64,000 nucleotides of DNA from Vitrella brassicaformis CCMP3155. Lineage: Eukaryota; Protista; Chromerida. The position numbers were made by a program, and so were the translations under genes. The notes beneath the pieces are model-generated. The model saw only the letters and a list, made by a program, of their open reading frames with translations. It did no database searches and had not been told where the DNA came from. Below, piece by piece: positions 34,573 through 46,948 of the stretch (within the stretch, counting starts at the first letter, position 1; each line of letters begins with the position of its first letter). The stretch covers positions 186,001 through 250,000 of the forward strand of contig CDMY01000802.1 of the NCBI GenBank assembly GCA_001179505.1. Direction: 5' to 3'.

Positions 34573-36829
34573 CTATGTCTCCATGGGGTCTTCGGGGGCC
34601 GAGCTCAGGCCGCTGCCGATAGTCGAGTTGAGGTCTGGACCATTCATCATGTCCGCCTCTGATACAGACGGCTGCTGCTGTTGTTGCTGCTGGTGTTGGC
34701 GAGCCGCTGCCTCAGCATTGGCCCTGTCGATGGCTCTCTGCTCCTCCTGCAGGTCAACGACTATGGGAGCGTCGGCGTCGAGGCCCTCAATCTCCTCGAG
34801 AGACATCTTGAACTTGGAGCGGATCAGATCCCGCAGATAGTCGACCCTTCTCCTCAGCTTGGGGGGCGCTGACGCGTCAGTACACAGCTCACACAGACTC
34901 TGCACACACACATGCACAACACATCGACGACAATAACACATTCGGGCAGACGTGGCCTCTATACACTATAGGCGCTGTGCTGACCGATAGGCCAGAAGTG
35001 AGGAAGTTGCCTTGCAGGAGGCTGTCGGTGAACAAGTCGTCAGGGGCCTGCTTCAGCTGTGCGTACAACACACCTGCAAGCACAACACAGACGGTGTCCT
35101 TGACTCAGAGTGCTGCTGGCTGTGTGTGGCTGCATGGCGTACGGATGAAGTCGCAGTACAGGTCAGGGTGGGCCCTTATCGAGTCCTCACAATTGCACAA
35201 GAGCGTCACCTGAGGGAGTGAAAGACAGCCACCACACACACTCGGATGCCGATGAGCCATCAATGGATGGATGTGTGGCCGTCCGTTTCGCCATCTCACC
35301 AGGGCCTTCCACTGCTCGAAGCCGTCAAAGTTCTGCAACCAGCAAACACACAAAACAGCCGTCAGCGTAGCACACTTTTCGTGTCCATCCATCGACCCAT
35401 CAGCCTTGCCTGTCCCAGCAAGAAGGCGATGTAGGCGAACTGCAGCTCTCCAAGGATGCCACGATCGTCTGAAGGGCACCATACACCATGCATCCCTCAC
35501 TGCAGCTCTTCTATGGCCTGTGCTTTCGCTACCATTCCTGTAGTTAGCTGTGAGTAGCTTCTCCAGGCATGAGGACCGATCGAGAGACAGCCTCGTCACG
35601 TCAGAGGGGGACGAACCTGACGACATGCACAGCGCAAGCAGCACAGCAAATTAGTGAGTAATGAGGCTCATCCACCCTCTCCTTGCTGCGTCGAACTTTC
35701 TCCCATCCATCCATCCATCCACCCTCCCGCCCGCCCAGCCACCTGGTGGTATCCTCGTCTTGGGTATATCGGAGAAGAAGACAGTCCCGCTGCTCACCCG
35801 GCCACGGAACGAACCTGACCCATGCGCAACACACATAGATGACATACAGCACAGCAAGCTGAAGCACTCAGCACTTGGAAACTCACTGTCGAATGACTCC
35901 GTCGGGGCGTCCTCTGCTGCTGGCTGTGGTGGTTCTGAGGGCTCCTGTGCCACAGCTGGCGGGGCCGACTCTGCGGATGAGCTGACGCCTCTCCTCTTTG
36001 CGGGCGGGGGTGCTGGGAGGCTCACACTCTCCTGGCCGGTGGCTCGCTCCATCCTCCTCTTGTCCTCAGCGTCGTATTCCTTGCCGCGTGAGGCAATGCG
36101 GTGACCAACAGGCTGATCACACACACATAATACATGTCTAAGGGATGATGCGGATGGTGTTGGCTGACCTCGACTTTGTCGATGATGGTTTGTGTGATGT
36201 GGCTGGACAGCTCTGACCAGTCTGAGGCCAGCTCCAGCGGATAGGGGCCCAGATTCTGCTCAAAGTGCAGGTTGGACACGCCATCGCCGTAACGAGTCTC
36301 CTCCTGAACCATACACATACACACACACACATACACATACACACACGGCGAGCGAACGACGATATCCCACACATCGCGACGTGCGCCATTCCCTCTCGCT
36401 ATTTGTCCCTCCTGCATACATACATCTTCCGAGACGACGTCAAACACCTCCGCCTCTGCGTTCCACCGACGAACAACCACCTGCACAGCCACACGAGTGA
36501 GTGAATGAATGTCTGTCTGTCTGTCTGTCTGCCTCTCTGCCTGTTTGTCCAGATGGTCGTCATGTGACCTGCGCGGGTTTGAGGTAGAGGAAGTATCCCA
36601 GTCTGGTATCGCCCTCCTCGCCCGGCGGACTCCAGTAGATGTAGTGCGCCCCAGGCGGGATGAGCTTGATGCCCATGAACCTCGGACCGATCTTCCAGAA
36701 GTGGTAGTCGATGCCCACATCGATGTCCTTCGGCGCGTCCAGTAGCAGGATGGTGCAGCTGCTCGCCGCGGCCTCCGAGATCAGCTCCCCGGCCGGCGGC
36801 GCGATGGGCAAACTGCGAGAAGGCATCAT
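34573..36829 (-). CDS. AAR2: AAR2, U5 snRNP assembly factor
   Basis: ILLLDAPKDIDVGIDYHFWKIGPRFMGIKLIPPGAHYIYWS, VVVRRWN, LGPYPLE, ILGELQFAYIAFLLGQ|NFDGFEQWKALV|TLLCNCE, LYAQLKQAPDDLFTD, APIVVD match the known AAR2 motif series. Confidence 0.92.
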
Positions 36830-37302
36830 TTCCGGAGACCCGTCGTCATCCACTTCTTCGGATTCCTCTGATCAGACAAAGCCAAACGCTGATCGCGCAA
36901 GGCCTACCAGACCCTTCGGCACGGTTTTGGTCCCTTCTCGCGTCTGCGAGCTTAGCCATCTTTGCGAGCTCAATTAGGGTTTAGGGTTGAGAGAAGACGA
37001 TCGGCGGCATTTTGAAGAAGGCGTGAAGCGTGAGGCGCACGGAGCGAGCACACAAGCCGCGCCGGACAGCAGATCGCTCCGCACATTGGAAAGGAAGTTT
37101 TGTTGACCCGTTTGCCGCAGCACATGTCTTGGAGAGAGGCATGAGGGTGATCTCCCGTCAGATCTGGTCTTCCGTCTGACAAGTACTCACACCTGATCGC
37201 ACGAGAGGGACTCGGTTTCGCCCGCCAGCGCGTCACTCGGTCATCGCATCACTCAGCTGATTTGATTGTTATCGCAACATCGCCCGCCGTCTGTCTGTCG
37301 CG

Positions 37303-37436
37303 ATGGGGTGCTCCTGGTTCGAGGAGTGGAGCAAGGCCGTGACCAACTTCAAGCACAAGCTCACCGAGAGCATCGACTCGGCCTTCGAGAGGTACACGGG
37401 CTTCGTGTACGACCACCCCTGTTGGGTAAGCAAAGT

Positions 37437-37476
<40 letters not shown>

Positions 37477-40400
37477 CACAGACAGAGAGGGAGGTCCTCA
37501 CCTCACAGCGGTTCTGCCATCGTGTCTTGTGGTTGTGTGACTGTGTTGGCAGTTCATATGGATTCCCGCGATAGTGTCGATAGCCATGGGGTCTGCGTGG
37601 ATCTTGCGCGAGGCGGAGGCCAACCCCCGGACACTCTACGCCAAACCCACATCAGACGCCATGAGCGTAACCATCACACACGCACACGCGACTGGCGGGC
37701 ACAGATGTGGTCTCACGTGTGCGATTTGTGTTGGGTTGTGTCTGTTGATTGACGGACGTCTATTATCAGGACCTGGCCTTGATCCAGGAGAGGTATGGCG
37801 ACTGGCCGCGTGTGACGTTCCTGCTGTTTGTGGGGGAGGATGGCAAGAACCTGCTGGACGAGGACGTCCTGTACAGGGCCAACCAAATGGTGGAGGGGCT
37901 CAACAATCGCAATGTCACTGTCAACGGCAAGGAATACCCCTTCGATGAAGTCTGCGTCAAGGGTACGTGATTGGATGGATGGGTGTGGGAGTGAGTGAGG
38001 CCATCCATCGTCATCCAACGCTCCAACAGACACCCACCCACCCACCCACCCAGCCACCCTGTGTGTCCATTGATTGATACAGACGGTACTGACGGGTGTA
38101 CGATGGAGAACGTGCTGCGTATGTACAATGGCCGCTGGGCGAACAAGACCGCCGAGGAGCGCCCCCTCGACTGGCCCAACCATGATAAATACGTATTGCA
38201 GCAGGGCATCAACTGGCCCGTTGACGTCTTCCTCAAACCCCGTGGCACCGACAACAACGGGACAACAATCGACAACGTATCAGGTATGCATTAGCCGGCC
38301 GACACACCGACACAATCCTATGACGTCACAGCGTCACCCTGTGTATGTGTGTGTGTGTGTGATCGCAGCGATGTTGTTTCGTTGGTCGCTGCGAGACGAC
38401 ACCTCCGACATGTCATCCGAGAAGCGCGCAGCGTCAATGGCGTGGGAGCAGGAGTTCCTCGACGAGGCCCACCATCATTGGAAGGACGAATTCAAGAAAC
38501 ACAATGTCTCCATCTACGCAAACGCACGACGATCCATCGGTCGGTCCGCACGGCAAGCTCTCAACCACACATGAAGAGGGAGGGAGGGACAGTGACGGAC
38601 AGCCTCTCTCTCTCTTTCCCTCCCTCTCTGTGTCTGTGTGGCTTGGTGGTGCAGATGACGAGCTGAAGGCCAGCACGACACTCGGCTTTGCGGAGCTTAT
38701 CCGCCTCTTCCTGGCCGGAGTGATTGTCTTCTGCTACGCCGCCGTGGCCAACTTCTCATGCGACCAATCCAAGACCAAGTGAGACGAGGACACGCACACA
38801 CACACACAATCCTTCCCTGCCGTATGTTTGGTGTTGTGTGTCTGGCTGTCTGCAGGACGTTTCCGGCCCTGATGGGCTGCCTTGCGGCTCTGTTGGGTTT
38901 TTTGCTGGGGTCCGGTCTGTGCTACGCGTGTGGGATGAAGCACGTGCCGCCGGCCGAGGCGACGCCATTCCTGGTGCTGGGTGTGGGGGTGGACGACATG
39001 TTCGTCATCATGAACAGCTACGCACTCGCATTCCAGTCATCCTCACCCAGAGAGAGGTGCCAACTCGCCATGAAGGACTGCGGTAAGTATGGCACTCAGA
39101 CTCCCACACACACGGGGTGACGTGATGGCGGGTGTGAGAGCTGTGTGTGTGGTGTGTAGGTATCTCGATCACGATCACCACTCTGACCAACCTGATCGCT
39201 TTCGGTGTCGGCGCGGCCAGCCCCTACTACGCCATCGTCAACTTCTGCATCATCACTGCCGTTGCGCTCGCCATGGTGGGTGCAAACACACACACTCACA
39301 CACCAGTGCATCGCAGCACTGATTGGCTGGTCGTCGTGTTGCGTGTGTGTGTCACCAGGGTTACGTGCTGACGCTGACATTTTTCGTGGCCATCCTGTGT
39401 CTGGATTGCCGCCGCGAGGCCACCCAGCCGCCCCAGACCTTCTTCCTCGCCACCTACTTCGACGGCTGCGGCCTCAGATGCTTCTCACGCAAGTCCACGC
39501 GCGACGACAGCACACGTGCAGACACGCACCGCACCAGCAGCACCGGCCACGGCAGCAGCTCCTCGAGCCGGCGCACCTCCCAGACATCCACAGAGGCCGG
39601 GGCGGGTGAGGTGGCGCTCACCTTCGTCAACGACGAGAAGGCCAGCTTCACCCAGCCAATGCATCCCGTCAGGCGATCGGCCAGCTGGCAGCCGGCCGGC
39701 GTCAAGCGGTACCCCACTCGCAAGGAGATGAGCACCTTCCAGCTCGTGGCACACCAGCTGCGGGACCAGGAGAAGAACATCCGCCGCCGTCGGCCGAGGG
39801 AGGGGGAGGTGCACGAGGAGACGTGCTGGGAGTGGTGGTTCCACACGCACCTGGAGGACCCCAGCAACCCCGCCCGGCGCGTGCCGAGGGGCAGCCGCGA
39901 TGTGTCGGACGGCAAGGGCGGCCAGCGGCTGCCGTTCAAGCTGTGGTGGGAGGAAGACCCCAATGTGACCAAGTACTTTGAGTTTGAGGAGCCTAAGGGC
40001 AACGTCGGGCGGTGGTCGCGCAAGTTCTTCCGCAGTGTGTGGGGGCGGCTCATCACCGTGCCCGCCTTCAAGGTCAGCCAGACAACCAGGGAGGGAGGGG
40101 GAGAGGGAGGGGAGCTCATGATGTGTGTGTGTGTGTGTGTGTGTTGTGCAGGTGCTGGTGGTGCTGATGTGGTTTGGATACCTTGCCATAAGTGGCTGGG
40201 GCGACTCCAACGTGACCATGGGCCTCAACCTCCTCGAACTCACGCCGTTCCAGTCCTACTACCGGGTGAGTACCTGACCGACAACGAGAGCGACGCACAC
40301 GCCGCAACAGAATTGCCTCATGTAAATATGCATGAGTGCAGGAGTTCTACGATGAGTTGTTGGATCGGTTCGACACGTACGGCGAGCAGGTCATGGTCAT

Positions 40401-41138
40401 CTTCCCGGAACCGCATGAGTGGTGGAGAAACGAGGCCAGGGTCAGTCCACACCACACCACACACAACCGTAAGTATCGATGTGTGTGTGTGTGTGTCTGT
40501 GTCAACAGGAGAACTACAAGCAGCTTGTGCAGCGTATCAATGAGAGTGACTACGTCTCCAAGGGCCCCAACAACATGCTCGACCCACTCCGCATCTTCGA
40601 GGAACAGGGGGGACCGTTCGGAACAAAGAATCCAAACCTTGCCAACTACACCAACGACCCGACGCTCTTCATGACCGAGTAAGCTTACACAGACACTCTG
40701 GCGAGAGAGACGAGACGAGGGACATACCACACAAATTGCCCACGCGACCGTGCGTGTGTGCGTGTGTGCAGCCTGAAGAGATTCCTAGGAGGAACAGGTC
40801 GCTACCTCTCCACCGAGTTTAAGTTCTCAGGCGACAACCGTAAGCTTGCAAGCATCCCGCTTCACGTCACATGCATGCCTTATCCATCCGTTTATCTCTC
40901 AGAGACGATTGAGAGCTATCGCATGACGTTCTTCGCCAAGTCGGGGGTCAACGGTCTGAAGCTCATGGAGGGGTCGCGCGACGACTGCCGCAAGGCGTCT
41001 GAGGCGAAGGCGGGGGCGATAAAGTGTCAGGCGTTTGGCGAGTACTTCATCTACTACGAGAGCGACGCCACCATCCTGTTCGACACCTTCCAAAACATGG
41101 GATGGGCACTGCTGGCCGTACTCATTGTGAGAGCACCA

Positions 41139-41177
<39 letters not shown>

Positions 41178-44100
41178 TCTCATGTGTGTGGCTGGTTTGT
41201 GTGTGTGTGTTTGTGTGTGTAGGTGTCGATCTTCCTAATGCACCACTGGCAGTGTTGGGTGTTGGTCATCTTGATGATACTGAGTATCGACGTGGGCCTG
41301 TTCGCCTTCATGAAATTCTGGGGCCTCGACCTCAACATGCTCACCATGGTCAACCTCATCATCTCAATCGGTATTACGAAACACCCACACACCCACAAAC
41401 GCCTCAACGAACACACAGAGGGGGAGGGAGGCAGGAGCGTCATGTGTGTGTGTGTGTGTGCGATTGCAGGTTTCTCGGTCGACTACACCACCCACGTGTG
41501 TCACACATTCGCACACGCGACGGGGCCCACCAAGAATCACAGGTGAGGAGGCAGCCATCCATCCATCCATCCATTCATCCATCAATTGGCCGTGTGTGTG
41601 GTGTGTGTGGTTTGTTGATGTGTGCAGGGCGAACGAGACGCTGGTGTTGATGGGCAACGCCATTTTCCACGGCGCCATCTCGACCTTCCTCGCCATCGTC
41701 CTCATCGTCACAGTCGACTCGTTCATATTCGTCGTCTTCTTCAGAATGATGACACTCGTACGCCATTGACACACACACACGCATACCAACACGCACGCAC
41801 ACAACACCCTCCTCCCTGTCTGTGTGTCTGTGTGCCTGCAGGTGCTGTGTTTCGGCTTCCTGCACGGCCTGATCATCTTGCCGGTCATCCTGACGTTCTT
41901 TGGCCCCCTGGACAACCTCGAGACCACTCTCAAGGGCGTGCCCACCTCGCTCAGCATTCAGGACGCTCTCGACAGAGAGGCCTCCCCGGTCGAGGCCGGC
42001 AACAGCAGCTACTACCACACCGACGGCAACCGTCTGTCGCCCATCGAGGAAAGCCCCATCGACAGCAACACCGTCAAGGAGTTTAAGCCACACGAATCTA
42101 CCAACCGCGGCCCCGCCACCACAGTGCACCAGATGGCGCCCTTCACCAAGAGTGGCGTCTCCGACACGTCGTCCATCTTCAACTCGGGGGTGGCCAACGT
42201 CTTCGACACGGTCAACGCCTTCAACACGCGGCAGCTCGTGAGCTTCGCCCTCGCGCCCCCGCACACCAAGACCATGAGGGAGCCCTCACCAGGCACCCGA
42301 TGCGGCAAACGCCTGACCGCCGCCACCGCCCAAGACACGGACAACCAGTCTGTGTGGATGTCGGCCAACTCGACAGCAGGCAACAACGGGGCGGGAGTGC
42401 AGGTGGTCTCGCGAGGCGCCACCAGCGCCCACGCGAAGCTGGACCGGGGCTTCCAGACCTTCCAGACGGCCGTGAGCGAGGTGGAGGAGGGCTCCACCCC
42501 GGTGCTGGGCAGCTTCTACGTGCTGGGTGGTGAGATCTACCACGACTGCTTCCCCGCCCTGCCCGACCAGCGCACCCCATTCTACGCCGGCAAGATCCCC
42601 CGCTTCCGCACCATGAAGACCGGCGAGAGGGACCTGGGGGCCGCCCACAACAAGGCCGGTGGCGGGCTGTTCCTCGACAGGCGTCTCGAGCTCATGAACG
42701 GGAGCAGAGCGGCACCCGCTGTGGAGCCCGAGGCGATCGTCACCCATGACATGGCCACTGGCCCGGCCGCAATGGCCAGCCCCATGGGCGGCCTCTCACG
42801 ACAGACGTCGAGCCTCAAGGCCATCAAGAAGCGCATCAGAGCCGTAAGAAGACCAAAGGGGGGCGAAGGGAGAACAAATGAGTATTGTCGTGTGCGTCAT
42901 TTGTTCAGAGCACGGAAGCGGTGGTCAAGGAGGAGATCTTCCTGCGGAGCGAGACGGGGCGGCTCACCCGGCAGTCGACCCAGCAGACGAGCCACCCCAT
43001 GTCGCCCCTCTCACCCCTCGAGCGCGAGCACAGCATGGCGCGACGCAACTCGTTCGCACGGAAGCTGTCCCGGCAGCTGAGCAACTTCTCCCGCCGCCTG
43101 ACGCGCAAGCAGTCGATACCCCCCACAAAGGAGGCCGAGCGCGAGGTGTCGCCCGTGAGCCAGGTGTCGATGCCCTCGCCCTACCCCCAGATGGTCACCT
43201 GGCCGGCCTGCTGGCCCGTCCGCGGCACCGACCTTCGACGGCCGGGGTGGGAGAGCGAGAAGGGATGCACCATTCCTGCAGTCAAAGTGCACAACATGGT
43301 ACACACACGCAGACAGACAGAGAGACACACACACAGAGAGAGAGAGAGAGAGAGGGAGGGGCGAGGGAGGGAGGGAGAGAGGGAGAGCGCACCAGTGTCT
43401 GATGTATCTGTGTGGGTCCGTGCAGTCGTTGGAGGCGGTCCATAAGCTGGTGCAGATGGCGCAGTCGCCTGTGAGCGAGTGGAAGTTTCAATCCGAGAAG
43501 AATGGCGTCGTGGTTAGCACATATCCCAGAGCACCCCTGCCCCCCACCACACACACACTCATCCATCCATCCATTTGTGTGCAATTGCTCATGTTTGTCT
43601 GTTTGTATGTGTGTCAGCTGGAGCTCAAGACGTTGCCGGATAGCAAGGACCCCGTGATCCGCGGCCGGTACACGATGCGGTCGCCCGGGCTGGACATCCA
43701 CGAGGTCAAGGAGGTCATCCTCGACAGAAATAGCGTCTGGCGGGCCCAGTATGAGTTCTGGCTTTACGAGGCCAGCCAGCACGTCGCACAAGTCGCCGAC
43801 GAGACCTTCCTCACATACCAGGTCAGAAAGAAGACAAGACACACAGACAGACAGGAGCGTGTGTTGGATGGATGGATGTGTGTGTGTGTGTGGTGTGACC
43901 TGTATGTGTAGATCTACAAGAGTTCGATCCCGAGCGACTCCCGGCGTGTGCTCTGCCACATCACTCACGCCGAGATGGTCCGCCCGCACACACACTCAGC
44001 CATCCATGAGACGAGACACCCATTCACCATTTGCTGTATGTGTGTGTGTGATTGTGCAGCTGTCACCGCATCAGTGTGTGGTTGCTGCCGTGGACCTCAA

Positions 44101-44572
44101 GCAGCACATCCCCGACGACCTCCTCGTCACCAAGAAAGAGAAGGCCGTCAGAGCCGAAATCCTGGTCAGTCACACAACACACACACAACACAGATAACAG
44201 AGACACATGCCTCCATCCATCCATCCACCATTGTGTGTGTGTGATTTGCAGCAAGGGGGCCATGTGATCAGCCAGAGCTGCGACGGGACGATCGACGTGG
44301 TGTTTGTGATGCAGCTCGACGTCAAGCCGTTTGCATGGGCACCCAGGGCGGCCGTTAGGGCGGCCTGCGCCAATGTCTACTTCGAGCAGGTGAGAGGGTG
44401 CCTGCCCAATGGGAGGGACCGATAGATAGATGCGTCAATGAACACTGTGTGTGTCTTGTCTTGTGGTGCCTTTCAGGCTCAGCAGCTGTATCGCATTGAC
44501 AACGTCTTGGGCGACGCGCGGGAGATCATGTCCCAGCCGCCCTCGCCCAGGAACTCCGACAGCGACGCCTAG
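37303..44572 (+). CDS. Patched/NPC1-family (NCR1-like) sterol-sensing RND transporter with a cytosolic tail and C-terminal START-like domain
   Basis: SSD motif PFLVLGVGVDDMFVI; ISITITTLTNLIAFGVGA; second TM bundle NLIISIG|FSVDYTTH, GAISTFLA, GFLHGLIILPVIL. Phase-0 splices continue in frame to EWKFQSEKNGV...VRAEIL|QGGHVI...VFVMQLDVKPFAWAP. Stop TAG at 44570-44572. Confidence 0.88.
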
Positions 44573-46948
44573 ACAGACCACACACCACACCACACCACAC
44601 CACAGCAGCACTGATCTATCCGTCCATGTGTGTGTGTGTGTGTGTGTGTGGTGTCCGTCTTGTCTATCGCATCCCGTATTTATGATATGTCGTCGATCGC
44701 AGGCAGGTGTGTGTTGCGTGAGTGTGGATGGATGGAGGGAGGGAGAGATGGATGGATGGATCGCACTATTTTCATTGTATGGTGTGGTTCCCACGTTCGT
44801 TGTGCAGTGGAGTAGCAGCAGCCATCGCAGCAAGCAACTGGAGAGGGATTAAGGGAGGGGAGAGGGTGAGAGTGAGACAGTCGGGATGGCTGCGTCTGGG
44901 CCCAGACACATGCATACATTCGTCGATTGCCCGCCTGCATGTGTGTCGCATATCGTTTGTTTCTGTGTTGTATCTATTATCGTTTCTGTGTGTCTCTCTG
45001 AGTGCGTTTATGGGGTGTGTGGGGTTTTTATGGCTACTGGTTGGTTGGTTGGTTCATTCATTCACTCACTCATCCATCCGTTCGTTTTTGGCGTATGTCT
45101 AGCCAACCAACATGGCGTGCAGGCGGGGCGGGCGGGCGATGGATTGATGCGTGACATGCGCAATACATACAGTGGCTGCCTGCATCTTCACGGCAACTGT
45201 CTGGCGTCTGCTCCTCGAAGCCGTCAGGCTGAGGTTTACGCTCGTCAATGTGTCGTAAGCTCTCGGCCTGGCGTCATCGAGGCCGAGACACCGGACAAAT
45301 GCCTCTCAAGATGCAGCAAGTCGCGAGATGCCATGAGAGAGTGATGATCCATCCATCCGTCCACCCATGTGTGTGTGTTTGTGTAATTCACGTGCTTGTG
45401 AATGAGTGAGTGAGTGAATGCCTGATGGAGCGGAGTGCATTTTCTTTGTTTCTCTGTGCCTGCCTGTGCATCCATCGATCCATTCATTGTGTTGATCATC
45501 CATCCACTCACTTCCTGTGTCCATCCACTGTGTCGGTGTTGCGTATTTTTCTCGTCGCTGTTCGGTCGCCTGTGTCAGTCAGACACACATGAAGGAGAGG
45601 AGCGAACTGGCGGACGGACGGACGGACGAGATCCTTTTTTCCGACACTGTCCATCGTCGATGACCGGTGACATAGATGCAAACATGATGATGCGTGGCCA
45701 GGTGTTCATGCGGATCGACGTGTGCATGCCGTGTGCGTGCCGTGATGTGTCCGTGTACTGCGATGAGACGACAGACAGGGCAGGAGATCGATGACCGACC
45801 GACCGACCGAATGGGCGGCCGGGGTGCCATGTAGGTGTAGGCGTAGGTGTGGGTGAGTGAGATGCGCGAGTGAGCCGCCCCACTAAGACCACGAGCTCTT
45901 TTTTCCGTGGGGCCCTTTGTGCGACTCACTCGGTGTCTGGTTGGCTGTTGGTTAATTGTGTTGGCAGGCGAGGAGGGAGGGAGGGAGGGAGGTTCTTTTG
46001 GGCGTGCATTGGCTGTGGCTTTAGTCGTAGATACCTACCTGCATCGGGTGCCCTGGGTCGGTCGGTCGGTGGGTCTGTCTGACTGTCTGTTTCTTTGTCT
46101 TGTCTGTGGTATAGCATGTAGCATGTAGTGAGTGGATGGGCGGCCGGGTTTCCTTTTATTTTCTTGTCGTGTCCTTTGCAGTCTGTCGTCATACTGCGAT
46201 GTGTCTCTCGTGTGTGTGGTGCGGTAAGCAGCGTTTTCCTTTTCCTGTCTGCCTGCCTTCGTGCGTGTGTGTGTATATACGTGATTTGTGTCGTGCGTGT
46301 CTTTATGAAAGAATGAATGGATGAGTGCATTGCAGTGATAATGAATGAACGAACGACGAGTGCGTGAGTGAACCCCCTTATCTCCCCCCTCCCTCCTCGC
46401 TATGCCTTCGTTCGTTCGTGCAGTACTAATCAGTCAGTGAGTGAGTGTGTGCCCCATGTGTGTGGCCGATGGCTGATCTGATAGATGTATGTATGTGGGT
46501 GCTGTGTGTTTTGTGATTGATCTATTGCTGGTCGGTACGTAGCCGTCTCCCTCCCTGCCTGCCTTGGCTTTGCATTCCTTTGCATTTGTGGCATGGCTGT
46601 GTGTGGACGGAAAGACCGATGGACAGACGGAGGTCAGTCGGTGTAATGCATGTCTTCATTGAGTGACACCTCTTATCGGAGCTGTCAACCAACATTCAAA
46701 CGAACAAAACATCAGAGTATCTGCGTTGGTACTCATCACGAGAGGCACACACACGTCAGTGCTGAGGGGCAGGCAGGCAGGCAGCTAAGCCACACGCATC
46801 ACAGAGACTTGCCAGGTAGGCCCGATTGGCCTACGCTGACGCCGCACGACTCTCTCTTACAAATGAAAATGGCCGCACGAGACACATCAAACGAACAGTG
46901 ACACGAGACACAGACAGACAGACAGACATCGGCCCCACTCAGCCATTA

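What the first reader, a model, noticed from the sequence alone, without database searches (positions are those of the whole stretch)
37303..44572. NPC1/Patched-type sterol transporter fused to a START-like lipid-transfer domain
Seen: after the last TM helix the frame stays open through phase-0 junctions (IRA|STE, HNM|SLE) into a ~200-aa domain with the START pattern (W....KNGV, EV..VI.D, VRAE..GG.VI, V....Q.D.K..W.P). Established: NPC1-family RND proteins move sterol across a membrane; START domains shuttle lipid through cytosol, and STARD3 does so at endosome-ER contacts. I do not know this fusion from NPC1, Ptch or apicomplexan NCR1. Inference: a single polypeptide that exports sterol and hands it to a second membrane at a contact site.
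Basis: partly seen in the sequence, partly recalled or inferred. Interest (0 to 1): 0.8.

Follow-up and report, generated by a model that had tools for sequence, protein, structure and literature searches.

The report
NCR1-type lipid pump fused to START
One expressed gene of the alga Vitrella brassicaformis joins a malaria-NCR1-like membrane sterol pump to a cytosolic START lipid-carrier domain by a long flexible tether. I found this combination in no other protein or paper, and it hints that such pumps work hand in hand with soluble lipid shuttles.

Summary
Window 37303-44572 (+) holds one 25-exon GT-AG gene of Vitrella brassicaformis CCMP3155 that encodes 1698 aa.

- **Transcript support.** A 6.8-kb MMETSP transcript contig maps exon for exon onto my model. 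Its ORF is identical to the model over all 1698 residues. Spliced contigs in three further runs show the same junctions, including those that link the last TM exon, the linker and the START exons.
- **Transporter, residues 1-1026.** It is a 12-TM Patched/RND protein with a sterol-sensing domain (Pfam E 4e-31). The closest solved relative is Plasmodium NCR1 (6e-86, against 8e-44 for NPC1). The TM4 DD and TM10 D..H proton-relay residues are kept, and there is no NPC1 N-terminal domain.
- **Linker.** It is about 410 aa long, of low hydrophobicity, and contains a basic RRxS patch.
- **C-terminal domain.** After a conserved WPACWPVRG..RRPG motif comes a divergent but genuine START domain: Pfam 25 bits, E 1e-5; AF2 model pTM 0.72; all 50 listed Foldseek hits START; VIA Z 19 to StarD4/5, STARD3 and StAR.
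- **Rarity.** No START was found in 121 transporter relatives. The same START module sits on two other Vitrella proteins.

The mechanism (pump plus tethered shuttle) is inferred, and the ligand is unknown. The scan had noted this same stretch once before, in an overlapping window.

The parts
37006..37302 (+). 5' UTR (297 nt) of the transcript
   Evidence: MMETSP transcript contig L005 maps from 37006 and its ORF starts at contig position 298. The ORF listing shows no earlier start codon in frame after the upstream stop.
37303..44572 (+). Complete CDS: 25 exons, 1698 aa. Exons: 37303-37425, 37553-37666, 37770-37962, 38083-38283, 38369-38539, 38655-38778, 38856-39082, 39160-39275, 39359-40072, 40152-40265, 40342-40440, 40509-40678, 40772-40839, 40903-41126, 41223-41370, 41470-41542, 41628-41757, 41842-42843, 42909-43298, 43426-43512, 43618-43821, 43912-43977, 44060-44164, 44252-44389, 44477-44572
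   Evidence: All introns are GT..AG and the model has no stop. It is identical to transcript ORF P0123. L005 maps block by block onto these exons. Junctions are seen in RNA contigs of three further runs. The database CDS CEM34095.1 (P0001, 1542 aa) equals residues 157-1698.
37303..41910 (+). NCR1-like Patched/RND transporter module, residues 1-1026 (TM1, first extracytosolic domain, TM2-6, a ~220-aa cytosolic loop, TM7, second extracytosolic domain, TM8-12)
   Evidence: Pfam Sterol-sensing 4.1e-31 and Patched SSD 9.1e-31. The alignment to PfNCR1 8v0g is co-linear from the N-terminus to the residue after TM12, E 6.4e-86. Hydropathy profile; tree.
38774..39430 (+). Sterol-sensing domain (residues ~308-447, TM2-TM6), spread over exons 6-9
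   Evidence: Pfam PF12349 and PF02460 on P0001 residues 136-291, which are model residues 292-447. Exon 7 alone gives Patched SSD at 6e-12.
38992..38997 (+). TM4 proton-relay pair D355-D356 in the motif GVGVDD
   Evidence: Aligns with PfNCR1 D570/D571. Positions. The relay role is as described for PfNCR1 in PMC11654669.
41481..41495 (+). TM10 relay residues D940 and H944 in GFSVDYTTH. D909 (SIDVG) lies upstream in exon 15.
   Evidence: Aligns with PfNCR1 D1383 and H1387; H1384 is Y here; D909 aligns with D1352.
41911..43199 (+). Cytosolic linker, residues 1027-1434 (~410 aa; intron at 42844-42908). It is rich in S, A, T, P, R and G, with a basic Ser-rich patch carrying three R[RK]xS sites at residues 1382-1406.
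   Evidence: Composition and window statistics. No Pfam family on residues 1020-1480. PfNCR1 ends one residue after TM12, and the Vitrella paralogues have tails of only 45-141 aa.
43200..43247 (+). Conserved pre-START motif WPACWPVRGTDLRRPG (residues 1435-1450)
   Evidence: Shared with the two other Vitrella proteins that carry this START module. Its function is unknown.
43278..44533 (+). START (helix-grip) domain, residues ~1461-1686: the end of exon 19 plus exons 20-25
   Evidence: Pfam PF01852 at E 1.1e-5 / 1.4e-5, 25 bits, profile 3-196 of 207. ESM feature search: 29 of 30 hits are START, score 0.96. AF2 model: pTM 0.72, pLDDT 69.6, element order alpha, three strands, two helices, six strands, long C-terminal helix. 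Foldseek against PDB: all 50 listed hits are START, best E 3.5e-9. VIA-align: Z 19.3-18.6 to StarD4, StarD5, BmCBP, MLN64 and StAR; 17-18 to CERT; 12 or less to other Bet v1-like folds.
44573..45978 (+). 3' UTR (1406 nt, unspliced) as far as the transcript contig reaches
   Evidence: The last block of L005 maps to 44474-45978 at 100% identity.

Best explanation
Shown: this is one expressed gene of Vitrella brassicaformis. Its product has three parts. (i) A 12-TM, proton-relay-competent RND transporter of the myzozoan NCR1 / PTCHD3-like branch of the Patched superfamily, with a sterol-sensing domain. (ii) A linker of about 410 aa with low hydrophobicity, probably disordered. (iii) A divergent but complete START helix-grip domain at the C-terminus. 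Inferred: because both ends of 12-TM RND proteins face the cytosol, the START domain hangs in the cytosol on a long leash from the pump. The most likely working model is a pump plus a tethered shuttle. The RND module moves a sterol-like lipid between the membrane and its extracytosolic domains. The START domain loads or unloads the same lipid at the cytosolic leaflet of that membrane and carries it to or from a neighbouring organelle such as the ER, within reach of the tether. The RND module thereby also serves as the START domain's membrane anchor, as the MENTAL domain does for STARD3. My estimates: architecture about 0.95; functional coupling of the two modules about 0.5; sterol as the shared ligand about 0.5.
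For: Single gene and transcript: the model equals transcript ORF P0123, contig L005 maps onto all 25 exons, and spliced contigs appear in three more runs. Transporter: Pfam SSD at 4e-31; PfNCR1 is the best solved relative at 6.4e-86, against 7.7e-44 for NPC1 and 2.4e-42 for PTCH1; the DD, D and D..H relay residues are conserved; the tree places it in a chromerid clade inside a starred alveolate clade that is sister to PTCHD3/PTR. PfNCR1 is an experimentally shown, pH-dependent cholesterol exporter (PMC11654669). START. Among solved START domains, the sterol/carotenoid group (StarD4/5, STARD3, StAR, BmCBP) ranks first at Z 18.6-19.3. Tether: a ~410-aa low-hydrophobicity linker with no domain hit. 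The same START module is also found behind a different multi-TM anchor in paralogue P0003, which fits a membrane-tethered mode of action.
Against: There are no biochemical or localisation data. The START ligand cannot be read from the model: CERT-type domains score only 1-2 Z units lower, the Pfam score is marginal, and no PDB START domain is found by sequence. No FFAT-like motif that would recruit an ER partner was found with a loose pattern. The module also occurs without any transporter (P0003, P0124), so it does not need an RND partner. The fusion was found in one species only. No single raw read or long read was seen spanning the whole mRNA. Logan contigs of three runs break inside exon 18 at 42030-42066, although L005 bridges that point.
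Confidence: 0.6

Rival explanations
1. The START domain is a built-in sensor. It binds a lipid from the cytosolic leaflet and regulates the pump allosterically or through the phosphorylatable basic linker, rather than carrying lipid to another membrane.
For: START domains act as regulatory ligand sensors in other fusions, for example ACOT11/STARD14 and plant HD-ZIP START proteins (established knowledge); ACOT11 START is among the structural matches. The linker carries three R[RK]xS sites in a basic patch just before the domain. No FFAT-like partner motif was found.
Against: A ~410-aa flexible linker is more than an intramolecular regulator needs. The same module sits on unrelated N-terminal parts (P0003, P0124), which argues for a self-contained function. 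The closest structural matches are transfer proteins.
Confidence: 0.22
2. The two modules are functionally independent. The RND protein only supplies a membrane address for a START transfer protein whose cargo differs from the pump's, for example a ceramide, phospholipid or carotenoid.
For: The module is portable. It occurs behind a different 5-helix anchor (P0003) and on a protein with no TM helix (P0124). Intron positions are shared among the three, and all tail introns are phase 0, as expected for exon shuffling. Carotenoid-binding BmCBP and CERT are among the top structural matches. Other notes of this scan report several unrelated lipid-transfer fusions in Vitrella.
Against: The pump keeps its proton-relay residues and SSD, so it is not a degenerate anchor. 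Of the five Vitrella paralogues only this one has the tail.
Confidence: 0.15
3. It is an annotation or assembly artefact: two adjacent genes (a transporter and a START protein) joined by read-through or by chimeric contigs.
For: Logan contigs of X1, X7 and X8 all end or start inside exon 18 at 42030-42066. In X7 the 3' contig is 2.8 times deeper than the 5' one. An internal start site giving an additional START-only mRNA cannot be excluded.
Against: Exon 18 is one uninterrupted 1002-nt exon. It is spliced upstream to the TM11 exon and downstream, in frame, to the linker and START exons. The broken contigs overlap by 23-32 nt, and contig L005 bridges the point at 100% identity. One ORF of 1698 aa runs through with no stop. 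Depths are similar on both sides in X1 and X8. The public gene model also joins both parts.
Confidence: 0.03

Closest known systems
Plasmodium falciparum NCR1 (PDB 8v0g; PMC11654669, PMC6424564)
   Same: It is the best solved relative (6.4e-86) and aligns co-linearly from the cytosolic N-terminus through TM12. The SSD is shared, as are the TM4 GVGVDD motif, the TM8 D, and the TM10 D and H relay residues. Neither protein has an NPC1 N-terminal domain.
   Different: PfNCR1 ends one residue after TM12. The Vitrella protein continues for about 670 aa with a linker and a START domain. In the tree it groups with chromerid paralogues, not as a strict NCR1 orthologue. Its cytosolic TM6-TM7 loop and extracytosolic domains are poorly conserved.
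Animal PTCHD3 / nematode PTR and Patched, NPC1
   Same: Same Patched-superfamily RND fold and SSD. PTCHD3/PTR is the sister group of the alveolate clade (the ESM feature search also gives PTCHD3 first).
   Different: It has no Hedgehog-related context, no NPC1_N domain (PF16414) and no PF22314. None of these relatives carries a START domain.
STARD3/MLN64 (MENTAL + FFAT + START) at endosome-ER contacts
   Same: A START domain is held on a membrane by an N-terminal multi-pass anchor, with the domain in the cytosol. STARD3 START is among the best structural matches (Z 18.7; TM-score by target 0.75).
   Different: The anchor here is a 12-TM proton-driven transporter, not a 4-TM MENTAL domain (no Pfam MENTAL hit). 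No FFAT-like motif was found. Sequence identity to STARD3 START is only about 18%.
Vitrella paralogues of the START module: CEM39675.1 (P0003, 1172 aa) and CEM00721.1 (P0124, 538 aa)
   Same: About 38% identical START domain, the same preceding CWP..RRPG motif, and shared intron positions after KNGVV and AEIL.
   Different: P0003 has five predicted N-terminal TM helices with no Pfam family. P0124 has none. Neither has an RND module.

Membership tests
Patched/RND superfamily with sterol-sensing domain (PF02460, PF12349) | Significant match to the SSD / Patched profiles | tested here: met
   E 4.1e-31 and 9.1e-31, far above the cut-offs; exon 7 alone gives 6e-12.
Patched/RND superfamily with sterol-sensing domain (PF02460, PF12349) | Two-fold 1+5 TM repeat with two large extracytosolic domains (12 TM) | tested here: met
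   Four co-linear aligned blocks to PfNCR1 cover TM1, TM2-6, TM7 and TM8-12. The hydropathy peaks are consistent, though the crude method merges some helices.
Patched/RND superfamily with sterol-sensing domain (PF02460, PF12349) | Charged proton-relay residues in TM4 and TM10 | tested here: met
   D355/D356, D909, D940 and H944 align with PfNCR1 D570/D571, D1352, D1383 and H1387; H1384 is Tyr here.
Myzozoan NCR1-like clade | Closer to PfNCR1 and apicomplexan homologues than to NPC1, Patched or PTCHD3 | tested here: met
   PDB search: 292 bits to PfNCR1, against 153 to NPC1 and 148 to PTCH1. Quick ML tree: alveolate clade with SH-aLRT 100. One-to-one orthology to NCR1 is not shown: five Vitrella paralogues form their own group.
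Myzozoan NCR1-like clade | Cholesterol/sterol export activity | not testable with these tools
   Known for PfNCR1 only (PMC11654669).
NPC1 proper | Luminal N-terminal cholesterol-binding domain (PF16414) and 13th TM helix | tested here: not met
   No Pfam family on residues 1-300. The protein starts with 40 cytosolic residues followed by TM1, like PfNCR1.
START domain (PF01852) | Profile match over the whole domain | tested here: met
   25.4 and 25.1 bits against a cut-off of 22, E about 1e-5, profile 3-196 of 207, when the domain is scanned alone. In the context of P0001 the score is 20.3 bits, just under the cut-off. This is a marginal, divergent member.
START domain (PF01852) | Helix-grip fold: N-terminal helix, nine-stranded antiparallel sheet, long C-terminal helix | tested here: met
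   AF2 secondary-structure order. Foldseek probability 1.00 to 50 START chains. VIA Z 19.3 with 196-210 residues aligned at 2.8-3.1 A, well above other Bet v1-like folds at Z 12 or less. ESM Atlas structural neighbours are all START clusters. Caveat: the model has mean pLDDT 69.6 and comes from a 3-sequence alignment.
START domain (PF01852) | Lipid bound in the hydrophobic tunnel; transfer between membranes | not testable with these tools
   Needs binding and transfer assays.
STARD3-type contact-site tether | FFAT or phospho-FFAT motif binding VAP/MOSPD2 | tested here: inconclusive
   A loose pattern scan of the tail and the cytosolic loop found nothing. This was not a validated FFAT scorer.
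STARD3-type contact-site tether | MENTAL domain | tested here: not met
   No PF10457 hit in the window protein or in P0003.

The most novel reading that the evidence does not exclude
The fusion is a 'Rosetta stone'. On this reading, NCR1/NPC1-type RND sterol transporters normally cooperate with a cytosolic START-type carrier that loads or drains the cytosolic leaflet next to the pump. In Vitrella the two steps, movement across or out of the membrane and movement between membranes, have been welded into one pump-plus-shuttle polypeptide acting at an organelle contact site. The portable CWP..RRPG-START cassette would then be a lineage-specific way of plugging lipid shuttles onto different membrane anchors.
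Probability: 0.35. Interest if true: 0.75.

Novelty: new variant of a known kind. Interest (0 to 1): 0.6.

Why it matters
How sterol reaches or leaves NPC1/NCR1-type transporters on the cytosolic side is still debated. In mammals, STARD3, ORPs and GRAMD1 proteins are candidates at lysosome-ER contacts. For PfNCR1, an antimalarial target, the authors themselves propose that a further chaperone or adaptor is needed (PMC11654669).

A natural covalent fusion of such a pump with a START carrier, in the closest free-living relatives of apicomplexans, is genomic evidence that the two activities belong together. It also offers a compact system to test this. The isolated domain can be assayed, and the tail can be added to or removed from NCR1 homologues in tractable parasites.

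It further shows that Vitrella shuffles a START cassette between membrane anchors. Finally, the public gene model lacks the first 156 residues, including TM1, and could be corrected.

Tried and rejected
- **Pfam on the six START exons separately, E up to 10:** nothing; the pieces are too short.
- **PDB sequence searches:** exon 21 alone and the 3-sequence START profile gave only chance hits. The domain is visible to Pfam and fold methods but not to PDB sequence search.
- **Full HMMER search of 1.84 billion representatives with the 68-aa exon 21:** only three proteins, all Vitrella. This gave the protein ids but cannot see distant START relatives.
- **Word-index searches:** the START region against proteins of 848-2698 aa, and the START alignment against short proteins, found only the Vitrella proteins themselves.
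- **START in transporter relatives:** none of 121 has PF01852 precomputed. An hmmsearch with the START profile against all of them found nothing. Pfam on the long C-terminal tails of the Toxoplasma, Neospora, Hammondia, Cystoisospora and Rhytidocystis homologues found nothing.
- **ESM Atlas, whole protein and structure:** no cluster combines Patched and START.
- **Literature:** four full-text searches found no paper describing an SSD/Patched-START fusion. The Phytophthora zoospore and GRA38 papers mention both domains only in separate proteins.
- **FFAT pattern:** none found.
- **tblastn exon mapping of the paralogues:** failed on short exons, so I replaced it with exact-match mapping.
- **Two-gene reading:** rejected, see rivals.
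- **NPC1-proper reading:** rejected, because there is no N-terminal domain.
Full report
**Gene model and organism.** The region 37303-44572 (+) lies in intron-rich, ~58% GC eukaryotic DNA whose introns are full of (CA)n and (GGAT)n runs. From the sequence I assembled a 25-exon model. Every intron is GT..AG, and the model gives 5097 nt, or 1698 aa, without a stop. Database hits identify the organism as Vitrella brassicaformis CCMP3155, a chromerid alga and the free-living sister of Apicomplexa. The public protein CEM34095.1 / A0A0G4GTL8 (P0001, 1542 aa, 'SSD domain-containing protein') equals residues 157-1698 of my model. It therefore already joins both halves but lacks the N-terminus with TM1.

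**Transcript evidence.** Cluster look-up returned a 1698-aa ORF from MMETSP Transcript_37098 (P0123) that is identical to my model at every residue. Its 6800-nt contig (L005, JGI 3300017297) maps onto the window in 25 blocks at exactly my exon borders. It has a 297-nt 5' UTR starting at 37006 and a 1406-nt 3' UTR reaching 45978. Exon 18 (41842-42843) is covered as one uninterrupted block.

Independently, contigs of three public runs (X1, X7, X8) are spliced and hence RNA-derived. They show the junctions 39081/39159, 39274/39358, 40264/40341, 40678/40772, 40839/40903, 41369/41469, 41757/41842, 42843/42909, 43511/43617, 43976/44059, 44163/44251 and 44386/44474. A 1971-nt contig in both X7 and X8 runs from 42037 in exon 18 through the linker and all START exons to beyond the stop. 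A 3532-nt contig in X8 runs from upstream of exon 7 to 42059.

In all three runs these contigs break inside exon 18 (42030-42066) with a 23-32-nt overlap. I cannot explain the break. There is no splice signal, stop or sequence difference there, and L005 bridges it. An additional internal promoter cannot be excluded without long reads or cap mapping.

**The transporter half (residues 1-1026).** Pfam gives Sterol-sensing at 4.1e-31 and Patched SSD at 9.1e-31. There is no NPC1 N-terminal domain: residues 1-300 match no family.

Among solved structures the best match by far is Plasmodium falciparum NCR1 (8v0g, 6.4e-86, 292 bits). NPC1 and NPC1L1 follow at about 1e-43 and PTCH1 at about 1e-42. The alignment to PfNCR1 is co-linear from residue 16 to residue 1026. 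It conserves the TM4 motif GVGVDD (D355/D356 = PfNCR1 D570/D571), D909 (= D1352), and D940 and H944 (= D1383 and H1387). These residues form the putative proton relay of PfNCR1, which was shown to be a pH-dependent cholesterol exporter (PMC11654669). PfNCR1 stops one residue after TM12.

Among 121 relatives the nearest are four Vitrella paralogues of 1042-1148 aa. Next come apicomplexan 'patched family' and 'lipid/sterol:H+' proteins, then animal PTCHD3. A quick ML tree (32 sequences, 890 columns, SH-aLRT only) puts the window protein with the Vitrella paralogues (support 89). These sit in a chromerid group (95) within an alveolate clade (100) that is sister to PTCHD3/PTR (99). Patched and NPC1 lie outside. 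The Chromera row is a long branch, so its place is unsure. 'NPC1/Patched-type' is therefore right at superfamily level. The precise address is NCR1-like.

**The tail (residues 1027-1698).** Only this paralogue has it; the others have 45-141 residues after TM12.

- Residues 1027-1434 are of low hydrophobicity, rich in S, A, T, P, R and G, and match no family. They include a basic patch with three R[RK]xS sites at 1382-1406.
- Residues 1435-1450 form the motif WPACWPVRGTDLRRPG.
- The remaining ~230 residues match Pfam START over almost the full profile (positions 3-196 of 207) at 25 bits, E 1e-5. This is above the 22-bit cut-off when the domain is scanned alone and just below it (20.3 bits) inside the long protein.
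- The ESM feature search gives START for 29 of 30 neighbours, at score 0.96.
- An AF2 model from a 3-sequence alignment (pTM 0.72, mean pLDDT 69.6) has the START element order.
- Foldseek against the PDB returns START domains for all 50 listed hits, with a best E of 3.5e-9 and TM-score by target of 0.73-0.80.
- VIA-align gives Z 19.3-18.6 for StarD4, StarD5, BmCBP, MLN64/STARD3, StAR and STARD6. It gives 17-18 for CERT, 16.6 for ACOT11, 13 for PCTP and 12 or less for non-START Bet v1-like folds.
- ESM Atlas structural neighbours are all START clusters.

The 'non-helix-grip fold' refutation test is also not met. The slight lead of the sterol/carotenoid START group is within the noise of a moderate-confidence model, so the ligand stays open.

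**How unusual is the fusion?** None of the 121 transporter relatives carries PF01852. A profile of the Vitrella START module finds nothing in them. The long tails of the coccidian and Rhytidocystis homologues have no START. No ESM Atlas cluster combines the two families, and four literature searches found no description. These searches have limited reach, so the honest statement is 'not found', not 'absent'.

The START module itself has two paralogues, both in Vitrella. CEM39675.1 (P0003, 1172 aa) has five predicted N-terminal TM helices and a long linker. CEM00721.1 (P0124, 538 aa) has no TM helix. All three share about 38% identity, the CWP..RRPG motif, and intron positions after KNGVV and AEIL. 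All seven introns of the tail are phase 0, while the transporter part has mixed phases. That is what exon shuffling of a cassette onto a duplicated NCR1-like gene would leave behind.

Other notes of this scan report further multi-module lipid-transfer fusions in the same genome. I did not test them.

**Mechanism.** The shown facts are one mRNA, one ORF, an apparently competent RND/SSD module, a long featureless linker and a START fold.

The rest is inferred. The C-terminus of a 12-TM RND protein is cytosolic, so the START domain is a cytosolic lipid carrier leashed to the pump. I favour a pump-plus-shuttle model (about 0.5). In it the START domain exchanges the pump's substrate between the cytosolic leaflet of the pump's membrane and a neighbouring organelle. 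That would either supply an NCR1-like exporter or drain an NPC1-like importer.

The rivals are START as an autoregulatory sensor (about 0.2), independent functions with the pump merely acting as an anchor (about 0.15), and an artefact or two genes (about 0.03).

**Verdict.** This is a real, expressed and so far undescribed domain architecture built from two well-known families: a new variant of a known kind. It is of moderate-to-high interest as a natural clue to coupling between RND sterol pumps and START carriers. Function and ligand are untested, and the fusion is known from one species only.

Noticed in passing
window 36964-36980: Two telomere-type repeat units (ttagggtttagggtt) lie 26-42 nt upstream of the mapped 5' end of the transcript (37006). 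They sit between this gene and ORFs on the minus strand at ~36000-36900. This may be a telo-box-like promoter element of a bidirectional promoter.
   Followed up: no
window 37303-38100: The public CDS CEM34095.1 starts at Met157 inside exon 4. It lacks exons 1-3, which encode the cytosolic N-terminus and TM1. The transcript ORF P0123 and the PfNCR1 alignment support the longer N-terminus.
   Followed up: yes
window 42030-42066: Logan contigs of three RNA runs all end or start here, in the middle of exon 18, with a 23-32-nt overlap. In X7 the 3' contig is 2.8 times deeper. There is no splice signal or sequence difference, and the MMETSP contig bridges the spot. The cause is unknown; it could be a graph branch or a minor internal transcript start.
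   Followed up: partly
L001:6001-10409 (P0003) and L006:4001-6277 (P0124): Two more Vitrella genes carry the same CWP..RRPG + START cassette. One has it behind five predicted TM helices with no known family, a STARD3-like layout without a MENTAL domain. The other has no TM helix. P0003 and the window protein also share a C-terminal IMS.P.SPR ending.
   Followed up: partly
window 42844-44476: All seven introns of the tail are phase 0, whereas the transporter part has mixed phases. Skipping any tail exon would keep the frame, so START-less or partial isoforms are possible.
   Followed up: no
window 44573-45978: The transcript contig has an unusually long unspliced 3' UTR of 1406 nt that contains (GT)n and (GGAT)n runs. 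It may overlap a neighbouring transcription unit.
   Followed up: no
window 37426-44476 (introns): Nearly every intron carries (CA)n/(GT)n or (GGAT)n/(CCAT)n microsatellites. These produce many spurious HTHTHT, CVCVCV and WMDGWMDG ORFs in six-frame listings.
   Followed up: no
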